From Utricularia gibba (Eukaryota > Plantae > Magnoliophyta), in contig NEEC01000172.1 of assembly GCA_002189035.1 (NCBI GenBank), positions 1 to 31,221 of the forward strand: a DNA stretch of 31,221 bases, given 5' to 3'. Position numbers and translations under genes: made by a program. Numbering within the stretch: the stretch's first letter is position 1; every line of letters begins with the position of its first letter. Positions 3,001 through 27,613 of the stretch are shown here, one piece after another. The notes below the pieces were generated by a model. It was not told the DNA's origin. It was given only the letters and a program-made list of their open reading frames with translations, and ran no database searches.

Positions 3001-3049
3001 CAACTCCGCAGAGAATCAACATGAAGCACAAAATCTTGGCAAGTCCCAT
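1..3049 (-). CDS. LRR receptor-like kinase, subfamily LRR-VIII-2 (At1g07650-like), 5' part; apparent frameshifts
   Basis: 15 GT-AG exons: 3049-2951, 2768-2594, 2059-1988, 1861-1794, 1713-1642, 1509-1439, 1366-1295, 1134-1064, 974-904, 829-758, 689-618, 530-462, 369-304, 217-152, 72-<1. Signal peptide MGLAKILCFMLILCGVVASSA; LRR N-cap (DWDFSKDPCSGEGNW...CDCTF...CHV); one LRR per 66-72 bp phase-2 exon (ALKSQNLTGNVPPEFAKLPYLKVL, SFMGNRLSGPFP, ILRRCSIQGSIPEYIGNLSKLETL, DLSFNNLTGVIP). Frameshifts near 2972, 2728/2619, 1812, 1456, 1127 and 958. Malectin and kinase domains are expected beyond the left edge and are not seen. Confidence 0.9.
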
Positions 3050-4659
3050 TCTTCTTGTGTTTTCCCCTTAACCCACGAAAGCTGGTTCACTTGGTGAGGA
3101 GCGAAGAGGAGACTGACTATATATGGACTGGACGCATCAAGAGTTCGCTCCCTTGTCTAGTTTTCATGGGGAAACCTGTCTGAGACTCATTCGTGATTTG
3201 TAAGTTTGGTCCCATGGTCTCTGACTCCGCGTTCTTTTGCTATTTGAACATCGGAAATAATTAATTTATGCTATTCAAAAACTAAACAAATTTAATTAAA
3301 GATGAATTTTAAGAAATTTTAAATAATTGAATATTACTGATGTCAATCATTTTTATAATAATGGTTATTATATCAAAATATTTATGTAAATAATTGGTAT
3401 TAAGTTATTGAGCATCAATTTTTTTAAACAATAGTGATTAATTTTACCAATATTTTGAAACAATGAAAACTAATTATATCCAATTTGTAAACATTGAAGA
3501 TTGTTTTTGTAATTTTTACAAAGAGTAAGAATCAATGACGTGAAAGAGCACAAATTAGTACTCTGAAAACTCTATCCTATACAGTCATATGTTTAAATTT
3601 CGAGTTTTGGTCTCTTATTTCAAAATAAAATATTCTTGAAATTTCCTCAAATTTCTATTTTGAACCCAATTAAAAATTTTCTTAAATTTCAAGCGTTGCA
3701 TTAAGAAATGGTCGTAGATTGGGTTCGATCCGGTACCAACAAGAACTGAAACCAAACACATTTAAATATTGAATTATTCAGTTTTTATCCACATGATTAC
3801 TTTCGTTTATTAATTGATTTCGGTTTTAAATAGTAACCATTTATAAATTTTTTTATTTATATTTATATTTTAAATATTAATGATCTAAAATTTCAATTGT
3901 ATTTTATTTTTGTTGAGATATAAATGATAAATTTATATTATTAACTTTAAATAATCTATGTATTTATTTTAAAAATATAATATATAATATAATCAATTTT
4001 ATAAAAAAATAATCAATTCAATTTTAAATAAACATTCATAAAAATTTAAATCGAATCCAAATCATTTATTATCAGTTCCAATTTATCGATTTCAATCATA
4101 ATAATAATATCTTATCCATCCACATCCCTAATCGCACCCCACCCCGTCATCACTTCAAACCCTACACGGAAAATGCAATTATTGAACGGGCCCACTAAAA
4201 TGGCTGAATTGGTCAATGATTGGCTAATACAAAATTAAGATTATATACATATTACAAAACCACTAGCTGTTATTTATTTGTGAAACAAATCTGAAACGGT
4301 TTACGAGAGACGTAGGCCATGGAATGCACCTATTCCTAAGACATGGAGCAGGCAGCATATGATCGATCGAGATGAAGCAATGCTCGCGCCTTCGCGAGGA
4401 CGAGGAAGGAGATTTGATGCATGATGGTCGTGATTCCAACTCTGGGACCAAAAGAAACCCGGGAGAAGATTCAGTTGCACGGCTTGGACAATGTTTGTGT
4501 CCCATTAGGGATGGAAACGAAACCCCACAACTGCTTAATTGCTTTTCATGCATCTGAACCGGTTGCTTTGCACCTGGTATGTGTATACACAGTGTGTTCC
4601 TTGTGTTTGAATCATCCATGGTATAAGCACCGATACAGAGAGAGAAATAGGGCTGAGCG

Positions 4660-6527
4660 TCAGTGGAATCTTCTCTGGGGCGGCTTGATATACTTGAATG
4701 ACGATGATGATGATGAAGACGGAGGGGGAGGCGGCTTCACACTTTTGAAGGAAAAGGGCAGCGTAAGAATGCGTTAACCAAGAATAAAATCATATGGGTG
4801 ACTGTACTTGAATTGAGGATGGCTAGTACCTGCTGCTGTTCCTGACCACCGGATTCTTCTTCAGACTGGCGAGATTTTTCACCTCACGGCTGTAAAAAAC
4901 CAGTTCCAAAGGGGTAAGGAGTCAGAGATACGCAAACCCTGTTGATTATCATTTATAAGAGTTTCTCAGGGATGCAATAAGTATCACAAACAAAAAAGAA
5001 AAACCAATGAATGCATGCACAGTTTTCAAGATGAGAAGTGAATAACATCATGACCGATCAATCAACAGTATCGCATCCACACGTGCAAGAAATTACTTAT
5101 TCCAACAAAAACAAACATCATAAGAAAAAGCAGGCGATGTCATCAAATTAAGTGATAAACTTATGGAGAATGGTCCATTTCCCAAGGAAAAAAACTCTGA
5201 TGGCAGGTGGGCACCGGAAAGTCAAGTGATGAATTGTTCTCTGTGGATCCTCTCCCCATGTCTGGGAAGAGAAACCATCAGTTGGTTGCAACAACCAATA
5301 AGAACATACGCAGACTTTTATTGGTTTTGACACCACTTTCACTATGTTAGTTAAGGTGTCTTCTGGTAGAAGGCAAAGCATCCACCACAACAGTACTCAA
5401 ACACGCTCGCATTTTTTATACCAACCCTTCTTATGTCTGATCAGTGCACCAGCATTCAATGCACGGACATGTAGTTTTAAAAGGTGAAATTTCAAGATTA
5501 AACATCAACGTAGAGAAACATCAAAAGAAAGGTAAATAGCTTCTAGATCTTACCAGTTGACAAATTCGCCTTGCTTTCTTCATCAGTGAACTTTTGGTAT
5601 CATATGGGCTGCCTATATAATTTGAAATCACATTTGAGTCAATCCAATACGTTTACTCAAGACATAAAATGACCCTTCAACAAGCCAAGTTACATAGGTA
5701 CCTCCAAAGTATCTTTTAGAGCCACTGGGAGGGACTTTGTTGCAAACCTGAACTTGTCGACTCATTTTCTCTGCAACAATACATCGTTAAAAAAACCTAT
5801 CTAATGTCTTAAAAACTTTTGCTTCATGCTTTGTCATTGGTGGCCACCTAAACAAAGTGAGCAAAGGTCTTGAACAACCTTTATCTTAATAAGCGACTGT
5901 TTCAAGAATTATGCGAAGATGAAATTGAGAGAGAAGAAGCAAGTGAATCACACTTACTAGCACGCTCTTGCTCATAATGTTGTTTTAAACGAGCAAGTGA
6001 ATCTTCTGTCATCTTCTCCCTCTCCTCCAATTTTGCCTGGGGCAATGCGAAGCCAACATGAACTACCAAGGAACATTCACAACTTGACTTGCAAACTGAC
6101 AAACGAACAAGTACCTCGTACAATTTCCGCCATTTAATGTTGACTCTTTTCTGCTTCATTCTCCCAACAACAGCATTCATGCTCTCCTTTCCAAACTGTG
6201 ACTCGTAAAATTTCTTCCACAACTTATCAGTAACAGGGCTAAGATCTCTACCCTGAAAATGGAACACACTTACTGACACAACAATGAAAAAGAACCCAAC
6301 AAAAATCAGATATTTCGAAACAAAAACCTCACCCTCGTACTGTCCTCGATATGCCTCAACTGATCGAGTGTACAATGGGACAGAAAGCGATCCAGGAGAT
6401 GATTTTCAGTTTCCCCAACATCTCCAAGAAACCTAACATTATCTATCGCCACCTGAACACAAAGGTCGACTAACGAAGGCAATTTCTGCATATTCATTTC
6501 CGCTGTCGAAAAATCAGAATCCAACAT
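4660..6527 (-). CDS. Plant Elongin A-like protein (transcription elongation factor B polypeptide 3 family, At2g42780-like)
   Basis: Exons 6527(or 6497/6491)-6333, 6252-6115, 6036-5958, 5770-5702, 5612-5554, 4889-4830, 4741-4660. Motifs LPSLVDLCVQVAIDNVRFLGDVG, HCTLDQLRHIED, DLSPVTDKLWKKFY, KWRKLYE, RQVQVCNKVPP, LMKKA, REVKNLA. The 59-bp exon 5 is out of phase with exon 6 (frameshift near 5570). Start codon uncertain. Confidence 0.85.
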
Positions 6528-7512
6528 CAACACACAACATTTACCCCTAAAAAATCGTAATTCGCCACACAAATCGTCAAAGTTCCCCAAGAAAAGAACT
6601 GAATAAGCGCTGGCACAATACCACTTGTAAGATCCAAGTTGCGGAAGGATCGATCGGAGGATGATTTCGATCCGAAGGGAGTGAAATCGAAATCAAGACT
6701 TGTCCTTGCCTAACCGGAATCAACACCTGTGCGGATATTTACCAAAAAGGCATTCACTTTAGATTTTTGTTCAAAACTTTGGAAATTTTTTATCCAAGTT
6801 ACTAAAGTTGAATAAAATCAAATATCACCCCATGGGAACAAAATAAAATATTTTTCTACCTCCTGCATAAATATAGTAAATTTAAATCAATATATTTTAT
6901 AGTATTTATATGGTAACAATTTAAAAAAATGGTTTCTCACGGTGTGAATCTTGATTGAACTAACAAATAAATCAAATCAATATTTATGTAGATATCATAA
7001 AATATATTTAATTGATAAATTATAAATATCATGAAAAATAATCTATTCATAAAAAATGATTATATCCCTACTATTTTATAATATAAAATAGCAAATGAAT
7101 CATGAAATATATAAATTTCACCATAAGACCTAAGAGATAATTCACATACACTAAAATTAAGAATATTAAATTTCAATATCAATTCTTTATAAATCTTAAC
7201 ATGGTATTTATTATCATTTACTACCAAACACATACTTATGTCATCCATTCTCTGTTAGTTTCAATTTCAAAAATTAGATAATTAGTTGCATTAATTAATT
7301 GATTAATAATGCAAAACATGGTACTAAAGAGACTGGTTAGTAAACAACTTTCTTTAGAAGTCCAGTGTCTCAGCTGCTGCTGCTCCTCCTCGCCTCACTT
7401 CTAAATCCAATCTGCTGAATTGCTCCTCCAGGAGCACTCAAGTTAGCACATGCATTGCATTCCGAGAGTCAAAAAACAAGTGTAGAATGCTGAGTACACA
7501 CTCCTCTGGTCA

Positions 7513-9651
7513 TTAATCTACGTCCATTTCCTGCTCCTTCTCAGATTGCCTGCTGGTCCAGATCTTGATGGTCCGATCATGTGAGACGGATGCAATGAAT
7601 TGCCCATCTGTGGAAACATACAGAATCAGCGTATGAACAAGTTTTCAACCAGCAGTAGTTTAAGAGGATGAGTTTGGGAATCCTTGGGAGATTAGAGCGC
7701 ACCTCCCATTGCATCTATGGATGTAACTTTGGCCTCATGACCGGAGAGTGTCCTCACAGGCTTGAAATCTCTTGAAGACCAGATCTGGATATGAAAAGAG
7801 CAGCATGTTGGCAAGAGCATCGCCAAATGGATGTTGCGGCAAAAAAGCTATAAATGCACACCTTAACCGTCATGTCGTATGAAGATGTAATGAGAAAGTA
7901 CCCTTCCTGAGGTTCGTATTTGACCTGAGAGATGAGGTTGGAATGAGCAGGTATTATGGAGAGGCATTTTCTCTTCCTCAAGTCCCATATTCTGCAGGAA
8001 TTATCTTCGCCACCGGTAGCTAGATGATAACCGTTTGGAGAAAAGTCGAGACCAAGGACCTGAGAGCAAAGGGAGATATAAGCATTTCCCTACTAGAGTG
8101 TGGAGAACAGAAGCAACTAAAGAAAAGGGATTTTACAGGCTTGACATGGCCTTCCAGAACAAGAATACTTCTGCCGGATCTCAGATCCCAGACACGAGCG
8201 AGAGCGTCAAGCCCACAAGATGCAGCTAAGGAGCCATCCTGATGAAAACATATTCCATAGACACTCTACTATGACCTTCCTGGAGAAGCAACTCGTCACC
8301 TGTTTCTACATCCCATAATCTCCATGTTCTGTCAAAGCTTGCTGTGCCTAAATATTTCCCTGTAGGATGAAATGCAATACGAGCCAAGCGATCCAGATGC
8401 CCCTGAAATGTTCTCAAAGCTGATCCCTGGGTACTCCACAGTTTTGCACTTCTATCAGCAGAAGCAGTCGCCAGTTGGGTTCCCAGTGGAGAAAATGCAA
8501 CATCAGTAGCTCGTTCAGTATGCCCCTTCAACTCAGAAACTAGCTTTACCCCAGGCATGCTCCACAGCTTTGCAACCCCAGTTAAAGAGCTAGAAACAAG
8601 GGGATGATGAATCCCATCAGCTAATGAGAATAGCTCGTTACATACAGCAAATATGAAAACATAACACAGCTAAAACATTGCATCTCAAGTTAGTGGACAC
8701 ATACAATCACATCTATAAAAAGGTATCTGCCAATTTTAACAAAAAACTAAAAAAATACCAGGTTGCAAGAGTCTTTCCATCATGTGAAACTGAACATCCA
8801 GAGAGGGGCCGATCGTCACCGATCTCACTGCATTCCAGGGCAAGCGTTGAAGCATGTTTCAGAGCCCAGTCTATCTCTGCATCTAAATCCTCATCAGGAT
8901 CATCTACTCTACGCCTCGCACGATTAAGGCGCTTTGCAGCCTTTACAAGCGAATACTTTGCAATTTCTCTACGAGCCTCTAGTAGTGCTTGTGAACCTTC
9001 AGTGTAAAAGGGGTATTGTATATGTTCTTCAGGTTCTTCAGATAAAGCGGAAGCTGTCGTTTCTTCATCCTCATGTGCCTTCATAAGCTTTTCAAGCTGC
9101 CCTTCAGAATCGAGCTTTGCCATAAGGGCCCGCAACCGATCACGTCTCTCCATCTCCCTCTCCCCAAAGAGAGTGATAGGTTCACCAAGACGCCGAAGCC
9201 TAGCACAGACTGCACTATCATTGGTAGGAACAGCCAAAGCTGCTGCACGGCGCTTCATCATAAGCTCCTGCACAGCTTTCTCATTCCTCTCTCTAGCCTG
9301 TTTGCTCTCTTCAGAGATATGATATTCCTGCGTCGACCCTTTAGAAGCACGGCTTGGCACCGACTCTTCATGCTCAGAATTGAAGTCACTACTTCGAATA
9401 TCCCCATTCCGAACAAGAGGAGAATTGACCACCGGGTTCCGAAGAGGCAATGGTGCCAAAGGCCTTGGGACAGGAGGGGGAACACCTGGTATGGGAGCAA
9501 TGGGAGGAGGTACGGCAGGCGTTGGAGCAAAAGAAGCGACAACATCACTACTGGGCGCTGAGACTGCATCAATTTCAGTAGCGTCATCATCAACGGTTAC
9601 AGAGGTCTGCGCGGCTGAGCTAGCGACGGGAGTTTCCTCATCGACGCCCAT
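7513..9651 (-). CDS. PRP4: U4/U6 snRNP Prp4-like WD40 protein (LACHESIS orthologue; not the PRP4 kinase)
   Basis: Exons 9651-8759, 8590-8137, 8059-7862, 7784-7703, 7607-7513. SFM/PRP4 motif [34 protein letters not shown] followed by WD40 repeats ([52 protein letters not shown]). One base is missing near 8265 ([21 protein letters not shown] continues in the shifted frame). Probable 5'UTR intron at about 9657-9886. Confidence 0.93.
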
Positions 9652-12502: not shown

Positions 12503-13610
12503 GGATTGACCATTGGCCCTTCCCTTGTTGTATTTATTCCCTGGCACTACGTTGTTTTTTTTATTTATTTTTACACAAATCCCCCAAGTCCCAAAATACA
12601 AAAGATGCACGAAAATTGATGTGGCACGTGTTCATTACACGCTTCTAATGTTTATTAGGAAAAAAGATATACACAGAAATAAACACATGCAAACAATTTT
12701 TTTCCAAAAGATGCAGTAAAAAAAAAGTCTGCAAGCCCTAAAAAAATCCTGCGACCGCAGCTGCCACACTTGCTCCCCTCATCAAGAGGTTCAAGAGTTC
12801 GAGCAATTTGAGGCGACTTTTGTTGTCGGCCATGATGGGGCTGCATATTTTGAGAATCTGCTCCTTAAGCTCAGCCTTTTTGGAGTCGAATTCCTGTCGC
12901 GTACGAGCATGCTGGTTGTCGTCGATCCAGTTGATGGTGGAGGTAACAGCATCCTCGATCTTCTTCCTAGTGGCGGCGGGGAGCATGGCTACTATCTCAT
13001 TTTCCAGGAGAGCGTCTCTTAGTTTGTAAGCGTATGTCTCCAAATCGTTTTTCGCAGTTGCCCTCTTCCGGAACTCCTCATCTTCCAGCTTGAACCTTTC
13101 GGCCTCTTCTATCATCCTTTCGATCTCCGCCTTGGAGCGCCTTCCGTTGTCGTTGGTGATTGTGATTTGATTCCTCAAGCCGGTGGTTGTTTCCACGGCA
13201 GATACCTTGAGAATTCCATTAAAATCGATCTCAAAGCAGACCTTAAACTTTATTTTCTCACTTGGAGCCGGAGGAATTCCAAAGAGCGTGAATTCACCCA
13301 GCAAGTTGTTGTGTTTGGTGTTTGCGCGCTCACCTTCATAGATCGAAAAGTTGACTGTAGTTTGGTCATCTTTGCTTGTACAGTATGCACGCTCCTTCTT
13401 GGTGGGAATAGTGGTGTTCCTTGGAATCACCACACTCATGTAACAGTCCACGGTGTCCACACCAAGGGAAAGCGGAGTGACGTCTAGAAGTACGATATCC
13501 TTAATCTTCTTAGTAGCCTCGCCACTCAAGATGGCAGCCTGAACAGCAGCACCATATGCAACAGCTTCATCAGGGTGAATGCCTTTACTACAGAGCTCTT
13601 TCCTATTGAA
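12503..13610 (-). repeat. ~1.1-kb duplicated block (Hsp70 3' coding half plus 3' flank), paralogous to about 16250-17374
   Basis: Direct alignment by eye: both begin GGATTGA.CATT.GCCCTTCCCTTGTTGTATTTATT in the flank, share AATGTTTATTAGGAAAAAAG.TATACACAGAAATAAACAC, and stay collinear through the CDS to GCTCTTTCCTATTGAA. No poly(A) at the 3' boundary. Confidence 0.92.
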
Positions 13611-13613
13611 CAA
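12738..13613 (-). CDS. HSP70: Hsp70 C-terminal half (end of NBD, linker, SBD-beta, lid, hydrophobic tail); 5'-truncated copy B abutting gag
   Basis: Uninterrupted 291-codon frame with [77 protein letters not shown]. It has no ATG of its own at the start and no ATPase N-terminus upstream. Confidence 0.85.
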   Translation of the reverse strand: MFNRKELCSKGIHPDEAVAYGAAVQAAILSGEATKKIKDIVLLDVTPLSLGVDTVDCYMSVVIPRNTTIPTKKERAYCTSKDDQTTVNFSIYEGERANTKHNNLLGEFTLFGIPPAPSEKIKFKVCFEIDFNGILKVSAVETTTGLRNQITITNDNGRRSKAEIERMIEEAERFKLEDEEFRKRATAKNDLETYAYKLRDALLENEIVAMLPAATRKKIEDAVTSTINWIDDNQHARTRQEFDSKKAELKEQILKICSPIMADNKSRLKLLELLNLLMRGASVAAAVAGFF

Positions 13614-14078
13614 CCCGAGCTTTCAACTTACGTTCCTCTCGATCATCTACTTCTTCTCCAAGTCTCTTCAATTTTTCTAGATTTTTCAGTAGTTGTTCAG
13701 TATTGGCAGCCACTTCACCCTCCTTGATTTTGAAATTGTATACTTCATTCCACAGCTTTTGTGCTTCCCTTCGCTTGTCTTCCTTTGTTTCTTCAAACGT
13801 TTTTTTAGGGTAAGCCACGCTTCTCTGGGAGGTTTTCTGGTAATGCTACGGTAAGCATCCCCCACAACAGCTGAGGCTAGAACCACCGAGGCTTGGATTT
13901 CCTTTTCTCTGTGAATCTTCTCTGCAGCTGATTTCTCATCGGGTGTTCCCTCGAAGATAGGCTCCATGGCAATAATCTTCCAGAGACCATGCAGTTGGAG
14001 GTAAATCTCCATTTTGGGAGCCCATATGTCATATTCTTTTCCATCGAAGGTTGGTGGTGATATGTTTGTGATTGACAT
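13614..14078 (-). mobile_element. Ty1/copia gag N-terminal fragment (DUF4219/UBN2, Retrotran_gag_2-like)
   Basis: MSITNISPPTFDGKEYDIWAPKMEIYLQLHGLW is the copia gag N-terminal signature. After one added A in the 13800-13806 run it continues PREAWLTLKKTFEETKEDKRREAQKLWNEVYNFKIKEGE...LEKLKRLGEEVDD. No zinc knuckle, protease, integrase or RT follows. Confidence 0.85.
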
Positions 14079-14146
14079 GATGGTTTGCTTCTTACAGGAC
14101 TGCAAAACAGAGCACAGCACTAACAGGTTTGTAAGAGAAGTTTTAG

Positions 14147-14430
14147 AGTTTCAAACCAGTTTTGAAGGTTGCCGATGTTGAGTAGTTGTCGTTCACGTCG
14201 GGTTCACCATGATAGCACTTGTTGATGTGTGTGTTTTTGGTGATGCTGAGCATAAAACGAATGATGTATATAGCCTTTTGTTCTTGGTATTGAGAAGATT
14301 TTTGTATTGAAAACAGGCTTCTTTTTTTGGAGTTGATTACAGGTATTTATACAGTCAGATTTACAACGACAGCCTATACACTAGGAATTAGCCGTTGTGG
14401 TTCCTCATCTTTAGTTGCTGTAGACATCAA
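14147..14430 (-). mobile_element. Possible 5' LTR remnant with degenerate PBS
   Basis: On the minus strand it begins TG at about 14430 and has TATAAATA at about 14353-14346. It ends near ...CAAAAC followed by TGGTTTGAAAC, which resembles the tRNA-Met PBS TGGTATCAGAGC, about 70 bp before the gag ATG. No second LTR or TSD found. Confidence 0.35.
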
Positions 14431-14738
14431 GCTTAGGGCCTTGGATAATCATGTGACTTGGTTGCTGGATCAACCTTGAGAGCCCATTTACTTGATTTTC
14501 GGTCCAATATGATAAGTCCAAGTTCGTGTTGTACTCTTTTCTTCTTCTTGCCTCCTCCCGTCGTTCTCCTCATTTCAGCATCCGATTTTTCAGAGTTTCT
14601 TTCAGAATGCTGTTGACTCACCTTTTGTTCATCCTTAACCATCATCAAAGATGTGAGAGTTTTGGAGTGGATGAATCTTTCTGAAACTCAAAATATTGTA
14701 TAGAACGTCAAGAGGAAGCACCTGCTTTTACAAATCCT

Positions 14739-14776
14739 GGTACCCTTTATATAGAAGGTACCCTTTATATAGAAGG
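14739..14776 (-). repeat. Perfect 18-bp tandem duplication containing a TATA-like box
   Basis: GGTACCCTTTATATAGAA x2 (14739-56, 14757-74); reads CTATATAAAGGG on the minus strand. Confidence 0.9.
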
Positions 14777-15499
14777 CGAAAAAACTAGCCGTTGCCTCTT
14801 GACCGTTGGATGTATTTGTCTGGTTCATAGCTACTTAGTCGTCGGATTTGCTTCTCCAAAGCATGTGAGGGACAGTGGGCCGTGAAGTGTTGCCTTTGGA
14901 CTGGACTTACCTCATATAATGGGCTGTAGCCCTTTGAGATGAGTAGGGCCCAGCATAATCAAGCTTACCCCTGCAGTGCGTTGCTTCTCCTTCATCGGGA
15001 TTTCCTCCTCACGACAGAACTTCTCCAGATCGCCGGACCTGTTCTTCCTCTCTTGTTGATCCTTGATATTCGCTGAAGTCTCAATTTTATCCTCACGATC
15101 TAACATAAATGTGCGACTCACTGCTGTGTTTTTGAGTGCGACTTGTGAACTCTTTCTTGCTTATTTGATTTCTGCTATTATCATCGAGGCTAGAAGCCCG
15201 ATCAGAATCACATGCCCTTCTCTGTTGAAGACTGCTGCTTGTGATGTCGAACAGGAAGGGTTCTGTCGTCGTCTCCCCAAATCAGCGGCTGTCGTGATAG
15301 AACATCTGCAAACAAAGTCAGTTACTGGGCCAATTAAACAACAAGGCCCAACACCAGCTATGGGAAAGCCCAAACCGAAGTTAATCACTCAGGCCCGCTG
15401 CTAGATGTATCAACGGTCGACTGCTGCTTTTACAATGCTTTAAATATCGCTCAAACCTGTTGTAAACGTTGCACTGTATTTTCAACTCTCTTGAGACAT

Positions 15500-16050
15500 A
15501 CAAGCTGTTATGCTGCTCCAAAACTGCTACATAAACATTTTCATTCTCAAGCTCCACTTTCCTGCTTTTGAAGTCATGAACCCCAGCGTCTTGGTTCTCG
15601 TCGAGCCATGTTTTGTTTGGAGTCTAACAGCATCTCAAAACCCCCTTTCTGATCGCAGGCGGAAATTTGGAAGCCATCTCATCACTGATTTCGTTTAGTA
15701 GTTTACCAAAGTACACCAGCAAATCATTTCTGGCACCGTATCTGCTCTTATCATTCGCAATTGTGAGTCATTCTTCAGAATACCGTTTTCATCCATTTCA
15801 AAACATACACTACACTGGAGTTTTCCTTTGCGTGCAGGGGGGAGACCGCATTGAGTTCGAATTTACCCAAGTTTGTTATCTTTGGTATAAGAACTCTCGC
15901 CTTCATACACTGAATACATTATTCCAGTTTGGCTGCTTATGCCTGTTTCATATCTCTTCTCCTTCCTTGTGGGAATTCTTGGAAGACAGAAGAGCGTCGT
16001 CAGGAATTACCAGATCACTATTCCATTTGTAAGGTCTGGACAAGCATCAA
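15500..16050 (-). pseudogene. Decayed Hsp70 SBD/lid relic (copy C)
   Basis: Minus-strand fragments in shifting frames: IPTRKEKRYETGISSQTGIMYSVYEGESSYTKDNKL, GKFEL, GLPPARKGKLQCSVCFEMDENGILK, LTIANDKSR, ARNDLLVYFGKLLNEISDEMASKFPPAIRKG, TWLDENQDAGVHDFKSRKVELE. They are collinear with the Hsp70 C-terminus and have two internal deletions and several frameshifts. Confidence 0.75.
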
Positions 16051-16501
16051 TACAACATGATGACATGCCAGTTGCCATTACTGAATGCTTGTTGACTGGT
16101 GGCCTTTTGGTCGATTAAGTAGAAAGAGACATCGTGACCCATTGGAAGGCCTGGTCAAAGCCGCCATCAATGCATACATCAATCATGTTGGGGATAACCC
16201 AAGATCTGAGTTTATCCAATTTATGATAAAGATTACATTTTTATTATTGGGATTGATCATTTGCCCTTCCCTTGTTGTATTTATTACTTGGCACTACGTT
16301 GTTTTTTTATTTATTTTTACACAAATCCCACAAGTCATACATAATATGTGGCTCTTGTTCATTACACGCTCCTAATGTTTATTAGGAAAAAAGCTATACA
16401 CAGAAATAAACACAAGCAAAAGGACATCACGTCGTGAGTGTCACACACAAATTTTTCCAAAACATGCAGTAAAAAAAAAAAAAAGCAAAGGTCTGAAAGC
16501 C

Positions 16502-18532
16502 CTAAAAAAATCCTCCGATTGCAGCTGCCACACTCGCTCCACTCATCAAGAGTTTCAAGAGTCCGAGCAATTTGAGGCGACTTTTGTTGTCGGCCATGAT
16601 GGGGCTGCATATTTTGAGAATCTGCTCCTCCAGCTCAGCCCTTTTGGAGTCGAATTCCTGTCGCGTAAGAGCATGTTGGTTGTCGTCGATCCAGTCGATG
16701 GTGGAGGTAACAGCGTCCTCGATCTTCTTCCTAGTGGCGGCGGGGAGCATAGATACTATCTTATTTTCCATGAGAGCGTCTCTCAGTTTGTAAGCGTATG
16801 TCTCCAATTCGTTTCTCGCCTTAGCCCTCTTCCGGAACTCCTCATCTTCCAGCTTGAACCTTTCGGCCTCTTCTATCATCCTTTCGATCTCCGCATTGGA
16901 GTGTCTTTCGTTGTCGTTGGTGATTGTGATTTGATTCCTCAAGCCGGTGGTTGTTTCCACGGCAGATACCTTCAGAATTCCATTGAAATCGATCTCAAAG
17001 CACACGTCAAACTTTATTTTCTCTCTTGGAGCCCGTGGAACTCCAGAGATCCTGAACTGACCCAGCAAGTTGTTGTCTTTGGTGTTTGGGCGCTCACCTT
17101 CATAGATCGAAAACCTGGCTGCAGTTTGATCATCTTCGGTTGTACAGAAGACATCCTCCTTCTTTGTGGGAATAGTGGTGTTCCTTGGAATGACCACACT
17201 CATAGAATAGTCCTTAGTTTCCAAACCAAGGGAAAGCGGATTGACATCTAGAAGTACGATATCCTTCATCTCCTCAGTAGCCTCGTCGCTCAAGATGGCA
17301 GCCTGAACAGCAGCACCATATGCAACAGCTTCATCAGGGTGGATGCCTTCACTAGACAGCTCTTTCCTATTGAAAAATTCCCGCATTAATTGCTTCACTT
17401 TGGGGATCCTGGTGGATCCTCCCACTAGAACCACATCATCCACACTCTTCTTGTCCATCTTCGCATCCTCCAAACACTCTTTTACTATCTGCACACACTT
17501 GTTGAACAAATCCTTGTTTAGCTCCTCGAACTTCGCACGAGTCAACCGTGCGTGGAAATCAACACCCTCGAACAGATTGTCAATCTCCATGTGGGTTTCA
17601 GCTGTGGATGACAACTCCTTCTTCGCTTTCTCACAAGCGGTCCTCAATTTCCTCAGAGACTTGAAATTTCCGCTCATATCTTTTTTGTGCTTTCTCATGA
17701 ACTCCGCAACGAAATGCTCAACCATTCTGTTGTTGAAGTCTTCGCCTCCAAGGTGAGTATCACCGGCGACAGCCTTAACCTCATGGTGCCCCCTCCATCG
17801 GTGGTAAGAATAGAGACATCAAAAGTGCCACCACCGAGGTCAAAAACCAGAATATTTCTTTCTTCGGCAGAATTTTGGTTCAAGGCGTAGGCAAAAGCAG
17901 CAGCTGTTGGCTCACTTATGATGCGCATGACATTTAGGCCGGCAATAGTACCAGCATCTATGGTTGCACGGCGTTGAGAGTCGTTGAAGTATGCCGGAAC
18001 AGTGATCACGGCCTGTTTCACAGCTGACCCAAGATATTTTTCAGCTGTCTCCTTCATCTTCGTCAACACCATGGAAGATATCTCCTCCGCCGAAAACAGC
18101 TTTTCCTCACCCTTGTAGTTCACAACAATCATAGGCCTGTCGTTGCTTCCTCGGATGACCTTGAAGGGCCATAGCTTGATATCTTTCTGAACAAGCTCAT
18201 CCGAGAACTTCCTTCCAATCAGCCTCTTTACATCTGTTTGTGAGCGGAGATTGTAGGGTAGAGAAATGAATCAAATGGGCTTTGATGAATGCAAGTTCTA
18301 ACCATCTGTATTACTCACCAAACACAGTGTTGGTTGGATTTGAGGACAGCTGATTGTGAGCAGCTTGACCAATGAGCCTTTCAGTTTGGGTGAAAGCAAC
18401 GGCAGACGGCGTCGTCCGGCTACCGTCCTGATGATTCGCGATGATCTCGATGCGACCCTTGTGCCAAGCGCCGACGACGGAGTAAGTAGTTCCAAGATCC
18501 ATGCCAATCACATGACCTTTTTCACCAGACAT
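16502..18532 (-). CDS. HSP70: Divergent cytosolic-type Hsp70 (copy A, full length; one apparent frameshift)
   Basis: Exons 18532-18319 and 18233-16502, with the intron at the conserved plant cytosolic position (VF-D|VKRLIG). Motifs [76 protein letters not shown]. Frameshift in the G5 run at about 17788-17792. Ends [24 protein letters not shown] with no EEVD. Confidence 0.92.
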
Positions 18533-18862: not shown

Positions 18863-20102
18863 TATTTGGGTCCCACTATTAATAAATCTTTGACAAATCC
18901 GTCACAGTGACCTGGTCTTGCTTGTATTTTTAATGTTGAAAGATTATCTTTCCAGAAATATTCAAAATTAGGAAGGAACTTGGGCTACAGCCCAACAGTA
19001 CGAGTGCGACGCGAGGCCATTTTCCAAACCGAATAAGAAATCGGAAATAAAATACTAAGAAATGTGAAATAAAAACATCCTTTTTTGAACATTTCATTTT
19101 AGTTGGGGCCGGGTCTTTAGGAATCACCCTATCGACCGCTGAACACCCCCAACTCACAGTCTCGTCATGTCCGATCTAGTTGGATTGTGTGACAATCAAG
19201 CAATTAAAATAAACTAATTAAATATATAATAAATTATAAATTATTATAATTGATTGAAAATTTTTAATATAATTCACGTTTATTATATATTTAGATATCA
19301 TGTATGCTCACTATAACTATTGAACACTCAATTTCAACAAGTTTTAAAATAATAAAATAGAATCCAATAAATATAGAAACCAACTTAAAAAAATCAATAT
19401 TTAAAGGTGGGAATAAAAGCATATTATAATTAAACAAAAAGATTATGTTAAATGCTAATAGTTCGATATTAGATTAAATTTTAAAATAAATATATAATTC
19501 TTTAATAAATGATCTAGATGTTTATAAAATATAAATCGAAATATTAGAAATATAGTATAATATAAAAAATATTTATTTTATATTTTTTGACGTTTTACGT
19601 TTAGAGGTGTTTCTAATCGAAATATAAACAAGAATATTTTGATTTATTCCTATTTATTAAAAAATTATATAAAAAAAATTAATCTTTTTACATTATTTTT
19701 GTTTAAATTCAAACAAATTAAACTTTTTGCATTGTAATCACATAAAGCAAACACTACTCAAGAACAGAGGTAACAGATTATATGATGAGATAATACGTAT
19801 TTCATACCTATTAGAATTTTTATTTTATTTTAATTAAAATAATGTTTGATGGGAAAAAAAAAAGGTCCCATAGATGATAATGTTAGATGAAGGGCGAGGA
19901 TGCAGTCCCGGTGCACGCGTTCGAGGGAAGGTGAGACCACCGCCCTGTTCCACCATTGACAGCGAGGGCGGTATTTCAACAGTGGGCTTCAGTTGGTATC
20001 CATGGAACGGGGTGAAAGTTTGCCTTCCCCAGGCTTCTCTTTCTTTGCCCTTCGCTACTGTTGTCTTATTTCGGACACCGCGTCCGGGAGCAGCCACTCA
20101 CC

Positions 20103-20876
20103 ATGAGCGGTGCTGATGCAGCAAACCCTAATAACTCTCCTCCCCCAGAGACTTCCCCTCCGCTCAACAAGAGGCCAAGCAAGGGAAAGGGAGGTCCCGA
20201 CAACGGGAAATTCAGGTACAGAGGGGTGCGCCAGAGGAGCTGGGGAAAATGGGTGGCGGAGATCCGCGAGCCCAGAAAGCGCACGCGCCGATGGCTCGGA
20301 ACCTTCGCGACGGCTGAGGAAGCGGCTCGAGCCTACGACCGTGCCGCGGTTGTGCTGTATGGGTCCAAGGCTCAATTGAATCTTCAGACATCTGTTGCTG
20401 GTACTGGCAGGAGCGGAGGCGGTGATGCCCGGGAACGCGCGTCAAGTTCCTCGTCCACGCAGAGACTACTGCGGCCCTTGCTCCCTCGGCCCTCGGGGTA
20501 CGGGCTTACGTTTCCGATGCCGACTCCGCCGTCTTCGTATCCTGCTGCGCCAGCTTCGCGGCCGTATGAAATGACACAAGGGGAAGCAGCGGCGATGAGG
20601 GAATGGTCAGAAACTGCTGTTCCGTTCCAAAACCCTAATTCCAGCTCCGGTTGGCAAGAAGAGAATCCTCAGCAATTCAGCAACTATCATGGTTATGATG
20701 AAATGAGCCCACTCGCTCCCCCCGATCCCACACAGGCGCCACCGCAGTCGGATCCCGCCGCGTTGTTGAACGGAGGATATACCAGTTGGCCGCCGTTCGG
20801 CAATGAACCCGACGATGGGTATCCATCAAATAGCATTTGGGACGACGGCGATCCATTCTTCTTCGACAACATCTGA
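20103..20876 (+). CDS. ABI4: AP2/ERF transcription factor ABA INSENSITIVE 4 (DREB A-3 group)
   Basis: Intronless. [68 protein letters not shown], plus the ABI4-typical LRPLLPRP motif and acidic C-terminus [15 protein letters not shown] 20103 preferred over 20061. Confidence 0.9.
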
Positions 20877-25008: not shown

Positions 25009-25569
25009 GCACTTGTTACTTTACGACCAAAACCACCTACCTACATAACCTTGTACACAGTAAAATTAGTAGGACTTTTGAATGTCCCATGAACACAGAC
25101 AAAAATAAATTGAGCAAAAATTAGTCTAAATTTAAACTCTTGCTACTGATGTCTTACCTTTCTGTATAGGTTAGAATTGCGATGACACGATATATTATAA
25201 ATCGTGATGATTTTTACTGTTCATAATACATCATTTCGAAATTAGTTTCCAATGATCATTCTCATTGAGCCATGAATGATTAAATAATATTTTTAAATAT
25301 TTTTCAAAAAATGATTTCGAAAAAGTGATGCTCCATCACTCTCACGAGTTAATGATTAATTTAAAATTATATCAAACAAAGATTAGGATTTAATTATAAA
25401 AATTAAAGGTCATTAACTAGTACAGTACAATCTAATCTCACTTCCAAACTACCAAGTCCAACTCGTACGGAAACGAACGAAGCATCAGCAACACATCACC
25501 AGTACAACCCATTCCGGCACACTGGAAGTGGAAGGAAGCTCTGTTGTATTCACAAGCATCATCATCCCT

Positions 25570-27613
25570 TCAGCCCTCGCAGCCCGGCAGCGAGTGCGCC
25601 GAGGTGTAGGGCGAGAACGTCCGGCGGACTCGCTGTAATGCAGAGGATTCGTTCGGGCCGACTCGCTGTACTGCAGAAGATTCGTCCTGACCGACTCGCT
25701 GTAATGCAGAGGATTTGGGACGTAGCTTGAGGACGCTACATAGCTGGATGATGCGTTGCCGACGCCCGGAGCATACGGGATAGGAATCTTGAGCTGGAGT
25801 TCAGTGGCGATGAGGAAGGATAGCCGAAGGACTGAGGTGAAGCTAGATAAGCACTGTTCAGTCTCTGAGAAGACATGTTCCTGAAGCTGGATGCAGAGGC
25901 AGAGGGATGAAGGGAGTGACCAGAGTGGCGGCTGTAAGATGCTCCGGTGATCGAAACAGAGCGGGAATGATGCGATGGCTGGTTGATACGGAGGGTTGCT
26001 GAAGATGCAACAGAAGATGGAAGTGAAGACAGAGAAGCTGCACTGGAGCATAGCAAAGGGGTGGATTCTGATGCTGCTGGTTCACCATCTCTACTTCTTG
26101 CATCGTGCTTGCAAACCGGACAAAATGTTCTCCATGAGGTGAGCCAATCATCAACACATACAGCGTGGAATTCTGGTACACAGGAAACTTTGTTAGACTA
26201 GGAAATGTAAGAGCACTGGGAAAGGTGAAGAAGGCTCACTGTGAAGGCATGGCAGAATTCTCAGCTTCTCCCCGACTGTATAATCCTCAAGGCATATAGC
26301 ACACGTTCTTGAGGTGCTTTTATCCTCCACAACAGCTGTAAATCTGAGACTTGGCATGGCCTTCACTAAGCGATGGCTCATCCCATGGAATTCTCGCACA
26401 TGCGAGGCTCGAGGTTGTTCTCTTCTTATTCTATGTCTTCGCACGAAGAAACACGTGGCTAAAACAGCAGACATGGCCAGTAAAGAAATGAAGGATATAG
26501 CCATAATAGACCATGCAGAATTATCAAATGTTGGGACTATCCATAGCACTGCATCTGCTGAGAGGGCATATTTTGCAAGTGTTTCGCCACAAGTTCTTGA
26601 AACAAATACAGCATTTATCCTAACACCAGCAGAACTTCCAGCCACTGCATTTAAATGTGAACTTCAATTGCACCCTTTAAGTAGATAGACATACAAAGAA
26701 TTAAAGCAATCAGCATTCTCTTGAAACCATGGTTTCTTGAAACATTTAACGTAGAATAGAAGCCAAAATATAGGTTTTAAATTTCTTCCATTCCCTAATT
26801 TCAAATAGCAGCACTCTTATTTTAAGATCATGCAAATCCATGTAAATCTATAGAGTCAACAACAAAGCTTCTAGACATCAGGATCGTAGGCTATGACAAG
26901 AATAATCATGGACAAATAAAGATAAACGTTTCTTAAGTTTCTACATATAAAAATCAACAGAAAACTAAATCTGAAAGAGTTCACAGTACAAGAATATTAC
27001 TTGCAACCAGGTCATCATTTTCGTTGTTGTAGATAATAGCAGCTTTGAATCCTGCAACTTGAGCATTTCGAACTTTATCCTCAAAGCTGCATCCTCCTCT
27101 AACAATCAACACGAAAGGGGATATTGAGATGTTCGTATTCAAAATATTTTTATTAGAAAGTGGTGAGCATGCATCTAAAGGTTCTGCCAAATGCACTGTT
27201 CCACATATTCCAGAACCTTTCGTCACTGGAGCTGCGAAGAGAGGAGCTTTCATCAGTTTTTTTTTGGCGATTATAAGCATTACAAGACCATTTTAATCCG
27301 CATCTTTCATCACTGCATATGCAAAAAGCCTTCCTATATAATGGGAAATTTGAAGTAATGCATGTAGAGAGGACATGTTTGGCGATGTAATGAAGTACTT
27401 TCAACAATCTAGACATGAATCAGAAAATATTTCAAAATTACTACATCAGGGAGAAAAATGAACAAAATAATAACGAGAACACTAACCAAAATTGGCTTCT
27501 ATATCACTGAAAGATAAATTAATGTTTTTTCCAACGAGGACCACATTAGCAGAGGCCTTGAATGAAGTTGCTAATGTGAAAAGGGATACATAAAATAGCC
27601 ACAGACTGAACAT
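25570..27613 (-). CDS. RMR: Receptor homology region-transmembrane-RING-H2 protein (PA-TM-RING vacuolar sorting receptor); two apparent frameshifts in the tail
   Basis: Exons 27613-27487, 27231-27001, 26644-26240, 26172-25570. Signal peptide; PA domain ([40 protein letters not shown]); TM ([25 protein letters not shown]); RING-H2 [42 protein letters not shown]; Ser-rich tail. Restoring single bases near 25780 and 25620 gives the family-like end ...[22 protein letters not shown]. Confidence 0.92.
25627..25715 (-). repeat. Three tandem 33-bp coding repeats (NPLHYSES-type 11-aa unit) in the RMR tail
   Basis: GACTCGCTGTA(A/C)TGCAGA(G/A)GATT at 25627, 25660 and 25693; period 33. Confidence 0.9.

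What the first reader, a model, noticed from the sequence alone, without database searches (positions are those of the whole stretch)
12738..14078. Candidate chimeric gene: copia Gag N-terminus fused to an Hsp70 substrate-binding domain and hydrophobic tail
Seen in the sequence: the gag ATG (14078) and the 291-codon Hsp70 half are in the same frame; only 13800-13614 is shifted. Adding one A to the A7 run, plus the AA that the paralogue has at the junction (CGGGAATT in copy A vs CGGG--TT in copy B), gives a continuous ~447-aa protein reading ...GEEVDDREERKLKARELFNRKELCSKG..., which matches REFFNRKEL in copy A. Removing one G at the junction also restores the frame. These are the same kind of indels that break essential genes in this window. 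Copy B has many substitutions versus copy A yet no stop or indel over 291 codons, which suggests it is translated, and gag is its only N-terminus in sight. Inference: a retroelement-derived capsid-like module joined to an ATPase-less Hsp70 peptide-binding module could act as a holdase, decoy or particle-associated protein. I do not know of a description of this architecture, but I could not search.
Basis: partly seen in the sequence, partly recalled or inferred. Interest (0 to 1): 0.8.

Follow-up and report, generated by a model that had tools for sequence, protein, structure and literature searches.

The report
Gag fragment abutting truncated Hsp70 copy
The front piece of a plant jumping-gene coat protein lies directly against the back half of a duplicated, already unusual heat-shock gene, but the two are out of register as assembled, so this is most likely a dead mosaic in a decaying gene cluster and not a new fusion gene.

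Summary
The sequence facts hold. On the minus strand an ATG at 14078 opens the N-terminus of a copia-type Gag. The frame breaks at the A-run 13800-13806. A weakly Gag-like stretch then runs in another frame to a TAG at 13605-13603. From 13613 an open 291-codon Hsp70 half (end of the ATPase domain, linker, substrate-binding domain, lid, hydrophobic tail) runs to 12738.

This half (copy B) is a 5'-truncated duplicate of the neighbouring full-length gene (copy A, 18532-16502). A third decayed fragment (C, 15991-15540) lies between them. A and B lack EEVD and are only 55-60% identical to canonical cytosolic Hsp70. They fit the published "truncated cytosolic Hsp70, T1 lineage": tandem clusters, diverse C-termini, barely expressed.

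The Gag piece lacks about the last 40 residues of its capsid-type domain and the zinc knuckle. No LTR, primer-binding site or pol was found. As assembled, the ATG gives 130 codons and never reaches Hsp70.

A fusion protein needs two separate frame breaks within about 200 nt to be assembly errors (about 0.2-0.8% at the break rate seen in the window). The lack of indels in B is real evidence of past constraint, but B evolves no differently from A (dN/dS 0.58). Best reading: a non-functional rearrangement relic. Low interest.

The parts
13800..14078 (-). Gag piece 1: true Gag start codon and 93 codons (DUF4219 motif plus the start of the copia-type gag domain).
   Evidence: hhalign against relatives gives 98.2% probability, E 3e-14. 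The best database relative is only 38% identical.
13800..13806 (-). A7 run where the Gag reading frame breaks (first frame break).
   Evidence: The Gag profile continues colinearly in a different frame after this run.
13606..13799 (-). Gag piece 2 (about 62 codons in the shifted frame). It is followed by a stop, TAG 13605-13603, three codons after the junction.
   Evidence: HMM positions 101-157, E 0.03, the best frame. (BLASTP against P0150, E 0.046, colinear). Pfam finds nothing.
13611..13620 (-). Gag/Hsp70 junction (second frame break). Homology to copy A starts at 13613. There are at most 4-5 nt of ambiguous microsimilarity.
12738..13613 (-). Hsp70 copy B: an open 291-codon frame plus stop. 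It corresponds to about codons 358-648 of copy A: last helix of the ATPase domain, linker, SBD-beta, lid and tail. There is no start codon at its head; the first Met is residue 58.
   Evidence: (PF00012, E 2.3e-67).
12741..12827 (-). Hydrophobic C-terminal tail that replaces the Gly-rich/EEVD end (29 codons), shared with copy A.
   Evidence: Kyte-Doolittle 19-residue maximum is 1.61 in B and 1.78 in A. AlphaFold predicts a helix at residues 264-278 with low confidence. No protein with this tail turned up among 5.8 billion.
12503..12737 (-). 3' flank of B, homologous to the 3' flank of A. It has 4 indels and 10.7% mismatches, and keeps the AATAAA-type motifs. Homology ends about 30 nt after the last such motif.
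16502..18532 (-). Hsp70 copy A, the full-length paralogue. Exon 1 is 18532-19, the intron 18318-18234, exon 2 18233-16502. It has one frame break at a G5 run near 17795 and the same tail as B.
15540..15991 (-). Hsp70 relic C: a decayed substrate-binding/lid fragment with stops and an internal deletion.
   Evidence: tblastn: 47% and 33% identity to copy A residues 178-252 and 298-368. Read directly.
14079..15539 (-). Unassigned spacer upstream of the Gag ATG. It has TATA-like motifs (a perfect 18-bp tandem duplication at 14739-14774; TATAAATA near 14350). It has no tRNA-iMet primer-binding site, no LTR partner, and no Pfam hit in its ORFs.

Best explanation
This is a non-functional mosaic left by rearrangement inside a small tandem cluster of divergent, EEVD-less cytosolic Hsp70 genes of the 'truncated T1' type.

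Copy B is a duplicate of copy A. Its 5' two-fifths (promoter, start codon and almost all of the ATPase domain) have been replaced. What now lies upstream is the first ~155 codons of a copia-type Gag ORF that has lost its LTR, primer-binding site, zinc knuckle and pol. The two pieces meet out of frame, and the Gag piece carries a further frame break.

Shown: the ATG at 14078 yields at most a 130-residue peptide, or a ~155-residue Gag stub if the A-run is slipped over. The Hsp70 half has no initiation codon of its own.

Inferred: the junction arose at the DNA level. Candidates are deletion or illegitimate (micro-similarity) end-joining, or break repair copying from the neighbouring paralogue. 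B was probably an intact paralogue for most of the time since the A/B duplication (dS about 0.14), which would explain its indel-free frame. It became a pseudogene only recently.
For: - As assembled there are two frame breaks and five in-frame stops between the ATG and the Hsp70 half.
- Homology to A starts abruptly at 13613. No trace of B's 5' half exists anywhere in the window.
- The Gag fragment is truncated inside its domain. In the relative P0150, PF14223 spans residues 27-200, while the window matches only to about 161. There is no CCHC knuckle.
- There is no LTR pair, TIR, tRNA-iMet PBS or pol ORF.
- The locus carries another decayed Hsp70 fragment (C), and copy A itself has a frame break.
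- dN/dS between A and B is 0.58. Unique changes are equal in A and B. Both have lost residues that are invariant in 26 canonical Hsp70s: 29 shared losses, 9 in A only, 6 in B only.
- A and B match the published description of the T1 lineage of truncated cytosolic Hsp70: no EEVD, variable lid and C-terminus, tandem clusters, transcripts scarcely detectable (PMC10687569).
- Gene models that join a Gag N-terminus to host domains are common among this Gag's nearest relatives (3 of 17: MOZ/SAS, AOX, RRM). Such juxtapositions are therefore an ordinary by-product of TE activity.
- No credible in-frame intron exists: 59 arithmetic GT-AG options, all with weak donors and 18-24% U.
Against: - B's 873 coding nt have no indel, while 215 nt of its 3' flank have four (P 3e-4 to 0.017 for the B lineage).
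- dN/dS is below 1 (Fisher P 0.044).
- B has not accelerated relative to A.
- The assembly does contain at least one probably false frame break, in a conserved gene (PRP4-like).
- One of the two breaks here sits in an A7 run, a typical error site.
- The ATG and the Hsp70 half share a frame (1-in-3 chance).
- B keeps A's 3' processing motifs.
- No transcript or read data could be examined.
Confidence: 0.8

Rival explanations
1. A real chimeric gene. Both frame breaks are assembly errors, and the locus encodes one ~447-residue protein: Gag N-terminus, then Hsp70 linker, substrate-binding domain and lid, then the hydrophobic tail.
For: - The ends share a frame.
- One break is in an A7 run.
- A conserved PRP4-like gene in the same window is broken by a 1-nt-type frame change, so assembly errors do occur.
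- B is indel-free and dN/dS is below 1.
- The Gag start codon is retained, and TATA-like motifs lie upstream.
Against: - Two errors within 465 nt at the observed break rate has P about 0.002-0.008.
- The junction break is not in a long homopolymer.
- The Gag module is truncated and lacks the knuckle.
- dN/dS of 0.58, with rates equal to A, does not single out B as constrained.
- No protein of 160-509 aa in 5.8 billion resembles B at more than 59% identity. Among the 120 best hits listed, none carries a gag Pfam domain.
- T1-type Hsp70 genes are reported to be barely transcribed.
Confidence: 0.03
2. Same dead end product, but an RNA-level origin. An LTR-retrotransposon reverse transcriptase switched template between element RNA and co-packaged Hsp70 mRNA, as for maize Bs1 and the LTR-mediated retrocopies of animals. 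This would have placed the 3' part of the mRNA behind the 5' part of gag.
For: - gag and Hsp70 are in the same orientation.
- Only a partial copy including the 3' end was taken.
- Homology to A ends about 30 nt after the last AATAAA-type motif, where a poly(A) site would be expected.
- There is short microsimilarity at the junction.
- The mechanism and its signatures are described in PMC5131818.
Against: - The defining flanking LTR sequences are absent on both sides, and no PBS is present.
- The presumed parent gene lies only about 2.6 kb away in tandem orientation, with a third fragment in between. That points to local DNA duplication.
- The only intron of A lies outside the copied part, so intron loss cannot be scored.
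Confidence: 0.1
3. Copy B is translated in some other way, for example spliced to an unrecognised upstream exon or started internally. It would then act as an ATPase-less, tail-bearing Hsp70 fragment, and the Gag piece would be irrelevant.
For: The frame is indel-free, dN/dS is below 1, and the 3' signals are retained. AlphaFold gives B the same beta-sandwich-plus-lid topology as a canonical control.
Against: - The first Met in the frame is residue 58, inside the beta-sandwich.
- In the Hsp70 frame a TGA lies four codons upstream of the ORF's first codon (13613).
- No convincing acceptor or donor pair was found.
- No related truncated protein is in the databases.
Confidence: 0.07

Closest known systems
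Truncated cytosolic Hsp70, T1 lineage (cyHsp70T1; Chen et al. 2023, PMC10687569)
   Same: Copies A and B lack the C-terminal EEVD. They keep a recognisable ATPase domain (A only), beta-sandwich and lid, and have a deviant C-terminus. They are far more divergent than full-length cytosolic Hsp70s (55-60% against more than 85%). They sit in a tandem cluster with partial copies.
   Different: The hydrophobic 29-residue tail has no counterpart among 5.8 billion proteins. No phylogeny against reference T1 sequences was made. The paper does not describe members abutting retroelement ORFs (no 'transposable' or 'retrotranspos' term in it).
Maize Bs1: an LTR retrotransposon that carries fragments of three host genes and is reported as a chimeric gene (Elrouby and Bureau 2010, as cited in PMC3726574 and PMC5131818)
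   Same: Retroelement sequence is joined in sense orientation to partial host coding sequence. This is the known precedent for retroelement-plus-host-fragment chimeras in plants.
   Different: Bs1 is flanked by LTRs, its host fragments come from unlinked genes, and copies share switch points across Zea. Here there are no LTRs, the donor is the adjacent paralogue, and the frame is broken.
LTR-mediated chimeric retrocopies formed by template switching (Tan et al. 2016, PMC5131818)
   Same: Partial mRNA-like copy, short microsimilarity at the fusion point, no poly(A) tail.
   Different: The flanking discontinuous LTR element, which that paper treats as the signature, is missing. The insertion is next to the parent gene.
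Annotated plant gene models that fuse a copia Gag N-terminus to host domains (for example P0135, Capsicum, 'MYST-like histone acetyltransferase', 759 aa; others with AOX or RRM)
   Same: The same Gag N-terminal module is followed by an unrelated host domain.
   Different: Those are continuous predicted ORFs, and their reality is untested. None carries Hsp70.
Closterovirus Hsp70 homologue (from my own knowledge; not checked here)
   Same: An Hsp70-derived protein associated with a virus-like particle.
   Different: It is a full-length Hsp70 with an ATPase domain, encoded by an RNA virus. It is not a Gag fusion and not a host pseudogene cluster.

Membership tests
Ty1/copia Gag (DUF4219 + PF14223 Retrotran_gag_2) | N-terminal DUF4219 motif and the start of the gag domain | tested here: met
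   Pfam DUF4219 scores 25.5 bits, below the cut-off of 27. hhalign against relatives gives 98.2% probability, E 3e-14. All 17 relatives carry PF14223 and DUF4219.
Ty1/copia Gag (DUF4219 + PF14223 Retrotran_gag_2) | Complete Retrotran_gag_2 domain in one frame | tested here: not met
   There is no PF14223 hit for either piece. The second part matches only weakly, in a different frame, and ends at HMM position about 157, some 40 residues short.
Ty1/copia Gag (DUF4219 + PF14223 Retrotran_gag_2) | CCHC zinc knuckle downstream of the capsid-type domain | tested here: not met
   The Gag-derived sequence is cut off by the junction at 13611-20. Hsp70 sequence follows.
LTR retrotransposon (element level) | Paired LTRs, primer-binding site, pol domains | tested here: not met
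   Self-BLAST and the repeat search find only the A/B duplication. No tRNA-iMet PBS within 3 mismatches lies on the right strand upstream of gag. Neighbouring ORFs have no Pfam hit.
Hsp70 (PF00012) | Substrate-binding beta-sandwich plus helical lid | tested here: met
   PF00012, E 2.3e-67, profile positions 352-597 of 599. AlphaFold gives the same topology as a canonical control, with low confidence in both.
Hsp70 (PF00012) | N-terminal ATPase domain | tested here: not met
   Copy B starts at profile position 352. No other ATPase-domain fragment is in the window apart from copy A's.
Canonical cytosolic Hsp70 | C-terminal Gly-rich region ending in EEVD | tested here: not met
   A and B end in a hydrophobic tail.
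Truncated cytosolic Hsp70, T1 lineage (PMC10687569) | Lacks EEVD, keeps the lid, and is nearer to full-length cytosolic Hsp70 than T2 is | tested here: inconclusive
   EEVD is absent and the lid is present. Identity to cytosolic Hsp70 is 55-60%, and 43-48% to EEVD-less Arachis and Saponaria proteins. No tree with reference T1 and T2 sequences was built.
Truncated cytosolic Hsp70, T1 lineage (PMC10687569) | Occurs in tandem clusters | tested here: met
   A, C and B lie on one strand within 6 kb.
Truncated cytosolic Hsp70, T1 lineage (PMC10687569) | Very low transcript levels | not testable with these tools
   No expression data exist for this unidentified species. No identical or close protein is in the collections.
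LTR-mediated chimeric retrocopy (Bs1-like) | Host fragment flanked on both sides by the retroelement, including LTRs | tested here: not met
LTR-mediated chimeric retrocopy (Bs1-like) | Microsimilarity at the switch point | tested here: inconclusive
   There are at most 4-5 nt, depending on the alignment.
Functional chimeric (fusion) gene | One continuous reading frame, or a credible splice joining the modules | tested here: not met
Functional chimeric (fusion) gene | Purifying selection on the fused copy | tested here: inconclusive
   dN/dS is 0.58 (P 0.044 against 1). There are no indels, but the rates equal those of copy A, and the date of the junction is unknown.

The most novel reading that the evidence does not exclude
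Both frame breaks are artefacts of the assembly. On this reading the plant makes a protein in which a retrotransposon Gag N-terminus replaces the ATPase domain of a T1-type Hsp70. That would leave a nucleotide-independent peptide-binding domain with a borderline membrane-seeking tail. It would be a domesticated Gag-chaperone chimera with no described counterpart.
Probability: 0.03. Interest if true: 0.6.

Novelty: new member of a known kind. Interest (0 to 1): 0.15.

Why it matters
If the fusion were real, it would be a rare example of exon shuffling between a retroelement capsid gene and a chaperone.

As it stands, the locus mainly illustrates two ordinary things:
- T1-type truncated Hsp70 clusters turn over through partial duplication and decay.
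- Transposon fragments placed next to gene fragments can mimic chimeric genes, especially in assemblies that carry indel errors.

The practical lesson is for annotation. This locus should be called a pseudogene or fragment unless accurate reads and transcripts say otherwise.

Tried and rejected
- **Splicing rescue.** I listed every GT-AG pair that would join the ATG frame to the Hsp70 frame without stops. There are 59, all with weak donors (3 of 7 consensus positions or fewer) and 18-24% U. The neat GTAAGT...CAATAG pair at the junction spans only 29 nt and is out of phase (own reading).\n- **Slippage at the A-run.** This would only extend the Gag frame to the TAG at 13605-13603. It would not reach Hsp70.\n- **LTR, TIR or Helitron-like borders.** None were found beyond chance-length matches.\n- **Canonical copia primer-binding site.** It is absent.\n- **Structure prediction as a test of decay.** B's beta-sandwich scores low (pLDDT about 53-66). 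A canonical Hsp70 fragment with the same 31-sequence alignment scores just as low (43-60). The test therefore does not discriminate.\n- **Gene conversion between A and B.** Differences are denser in the first 360 nt (P 0.002), but this is mainly non-synonymous. The longest identical run (72 nt) is not exceptional (P 0.075).\n- **Finding the species, orthologues or transcripts.** Exact look-ups were blank. The closest proteins are 59% identical (Hsp70), 38% (Gag) and 49% (ABI4-like, Lamiales on top). No orthologous locus could be compared.\n- **Apparent frame breaks in the Elongin-A-like and RING genes.** These turned out to be ordinary introns.
Full report
**What is in the sequence.** The region is plant nuclear DNA.

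On the minus strand, the ATG at 14078 opens a frame that reads 93 Gag-like codons up to an A7 run (13800-13806). It then continues as unrelated sequence to a stop at 13688-13686, 130 codons in all. A second frame is open from 13818 to a TAG at 13605-13603. A third ORF, in the same frame as the ATG, runs from 13613 to 12738. It encodes 291 residues of Hsp70 ending in a hydrophobic tail.

**Identity of the two modules.** The 291-codon ORF matches Pfam HSP70 (E 2.3e-67) over profile positions 352-597 of 599. That is the last helix of the ATPase domain, the linker, the beta-sandwich and the lid.

The first Gag piece scores just below the Pfam threshold for DUF4219 (25.5 against 27 bits). A scan of 1.84 billion representative proteins found only 28 relatives, the best at 38% identity. 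All 17 that I aligned carry PF14223 (gag polypeptide of LTR copia type) and DUF4219. A profile-profile comparison places the piece on Gag residues 6-102 with 98.2% probability.

The second piece has no significant match by itself. It is nevertheless the best of all frames against a Gag profile, and it aligns colinearly at positions 101-157 (E 0.03; BLASTP E 0.046). So the Gag frame really does shift at the A-run.

In a relative, the gag domain spans residues 27-200. The window's fragment ends near residue 161 and has no CCHC knuckle, so the 'capsid-like module' is incomplete.

**Context.** Homology searches within the window show a single duplication: 12503-13613 against 16250-17377, 86.8% identical.

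- The partner, copy A, is a complete Hsp70 gene on the same strand (ATG 18532, an 85-nt intron at 18318-18234, stop at 16502). It has the same tail and one frame break at a G5 run near 17795.
- No part of the window resembles the missing 5' half of B.
- Between A and B lies a third, badly decayed Hsp70 fragment at 15991-15540.
- Upstream of the Gag ATG there is no LTR partner, no inverted repeat of note, no tRNA-iMet primer-binding site, and no ORF with a Pfam hit.
- The junction lies within 13611-20 and shows at most 4-5 nt of alignment-dependent microsimilarity.

**What kind of Hsp70.** Copies A and B are only 55-60% identical to canonical plant cytosolic Hsp70s. Nothing among 5.8 billion proteins shares their C-terminal region; the best hit is 46% identical and does not cover the tail.

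They lack EEVD. At 147 columns invariant in 26 canonical sequences, they share 29 replacements, with 9 more only in A and 6 more only in B.

This matches the published 'truncated cytosolic Hsp70, T1 lineage'. That lineage has no EEVD, a variable lid and C-terminus, expansion in tandem clusters, and transcripts that are hard to detect (PMC10687569).

The tail is borderline for a membrane segment (Kyte-Doolittle 19-residue maximum 1.78 in A and 1.61 in B).

The neighbouring ABI4-like gene is closest to Lamiales sequences, at only 49% identity. The species is therefore not in the collections, and no orthologue or transcript could be examined.

**Is copy B under selection?** A and B differ at 78 of 876 nt and 49 of 291 residues. 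dS is 0.142, dN is 0.083 and dN/dS is 0.58, which is marginally below 1 (Fisher P 0.044).

- The absence of stop codons is not informative. With 39 random substitutions the frame stays open 32% of the time.
- The absence of indels is informative. The 3' flank has four indels in 215 aligned nt, while 873 coding nt have none. For the B lineage alone this gives P between 3e-4 and 0.017, depending on whether homopolymer indels are counted.
- Relative-rate tests with eleven outgroups show no excess of changes in B (about 12-15 unique to A and 9-13 unique to B with plant cytosolic outgroups).

B has therefore evolved like A: weakly constrained, frame kept. This fits a B that was a complete paralogue for most of its history and lost its 5' part recently. 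It also fits a B that is still translated. The data cannot separate these.

The PRP4-like WD40 gene is otherwise intact and highly conserved, yet it changes frame near 8262 in the middle of a repeat. Copy A's break is a second candidate.

Apparent breaks in the Elongin-A-like and RING genes are introns, and the ABI4-like gene is intact.

That gives one or two breaks in roughly 7 kb of conserved coding sequence. At that rate, two breaks inside the 465-nt Gag stretch have a probability of about 0.002-0.008. The junction break is not in a long homopolymer.

No in-frame intron with plausible plant signals exists. Slippage at the A-run would only reach the TAG just past the junction.

**Conclusion.** The most likely reading (about 0.8) is a dead mosaic. 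A 5'-truncated member of a turning-over T1-type Hsp70 cluster has been joined out of frame to a stranded Gag N-terminal fragment. The join was probably made by DNA-level deletion, end-joining or repair copying from the adjacent paralogue. That mechanism is inferred, not shown.

An RNA-level origin by reverse-transcriptase template switching, as in maize Bs1 and LTR-mediated retrocopies (PMC5131818; PMC3726574), is a minor alternative for the origin. In its favour, B's homology ends about where a poly(A) site is expected. Against it, the defining flanking LTRs are absent and the donor gene is next door.

A real, translated Gag-Hsp70 fusion is not excluded but is improbable (about 0.03).

Predicted proteins that join a Gag N-terminus to host domains occur among this Gag's nearest relatives (3 of 17). 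The architecture class is therefore not unusual in plant annotations, although I found none with Hsp70.

Structure prediction did not discriminate. B and a canonical control gave the same topology and equally low confidence.

**Handling note.** I built no continuous or mended version, and I describe only where the breaks lie.

Noticed in passing
window 8226-8300 (minus strand), within the PRP4-like gene about 9651-7500: A U4/U6 snRNP PRP4-like WD40 gene, otherwise intact and conserved, changes reading frame near 8262 in the middle of a WD repeat (EGHSR | [12 protein letters not shown]). This is probably an assembly indel and makes a useful internal control for the error rate.
   Followed up: partly
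window 17785-17800 (minus strand): Hsp70 copy A changes frame at a G5 run inside its ATPase domain. This is either an assembly error or a sign that the 'parent' copy is itself a young pseudogene.
   Followed up: partly
window 15540-15991 (minus strand): A third, heavily decayed Hsp70 substrate-binding/lid fragment with stops and an internal deletion, starting about 260 nt downstream of the end of copy A's 3' flank (16250).
   Followed up: partly
window 16505-16591 and 12741-12827 (minus strand): The 29-residue hydrophobic tail that replaces the Gly-rich/EEVD end is shared by A and B. It has no match among 5.8 billion proteins and is borderline for a transmembrane segment. This could be a lineage-specific T1 Hsp70 subtype.
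   Followed up: partly
window 14739-14774: A perfect 18-bp tandem duplication containing a TATA-like motif (minus strand TTCTATATAAAGGGTACC, twice). Another TATAAATA lies near 14350, about 270 nt upstream of the Gag ATG. Its promoter role is unknown.
   Followed up: no
window 14200-14215 (minus strand): A CA|TGG... step (TATCA followed by TGGTGAACCCGA) resembles an LTR end followed by a primer-binding site. It does not match tRNA-iMet, and no partner LTR exists.
   Followed up: no
window 20100-20876 (plus strand): An intact, intronless, GC-rich (57%) AP2/ERF gene of the ABI4 type. The best hits are Lamiales at only about 49% identity, so the source species is an asterid not represented in the protein collections.
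   Followed up: partly
window 5902-6590 and 25485-26645 (minus strand): An Elongin-A-domain gene and a RING-H2 gene. Their split ORFs are explained by ordinary GT-AG introns.
   Followed up: yes
window 3001-4000 and 19001-20000: Two very AT-rich kilobases (GC 0.26-0.27) amid sequence of about 40% GC.
   Followed up: no
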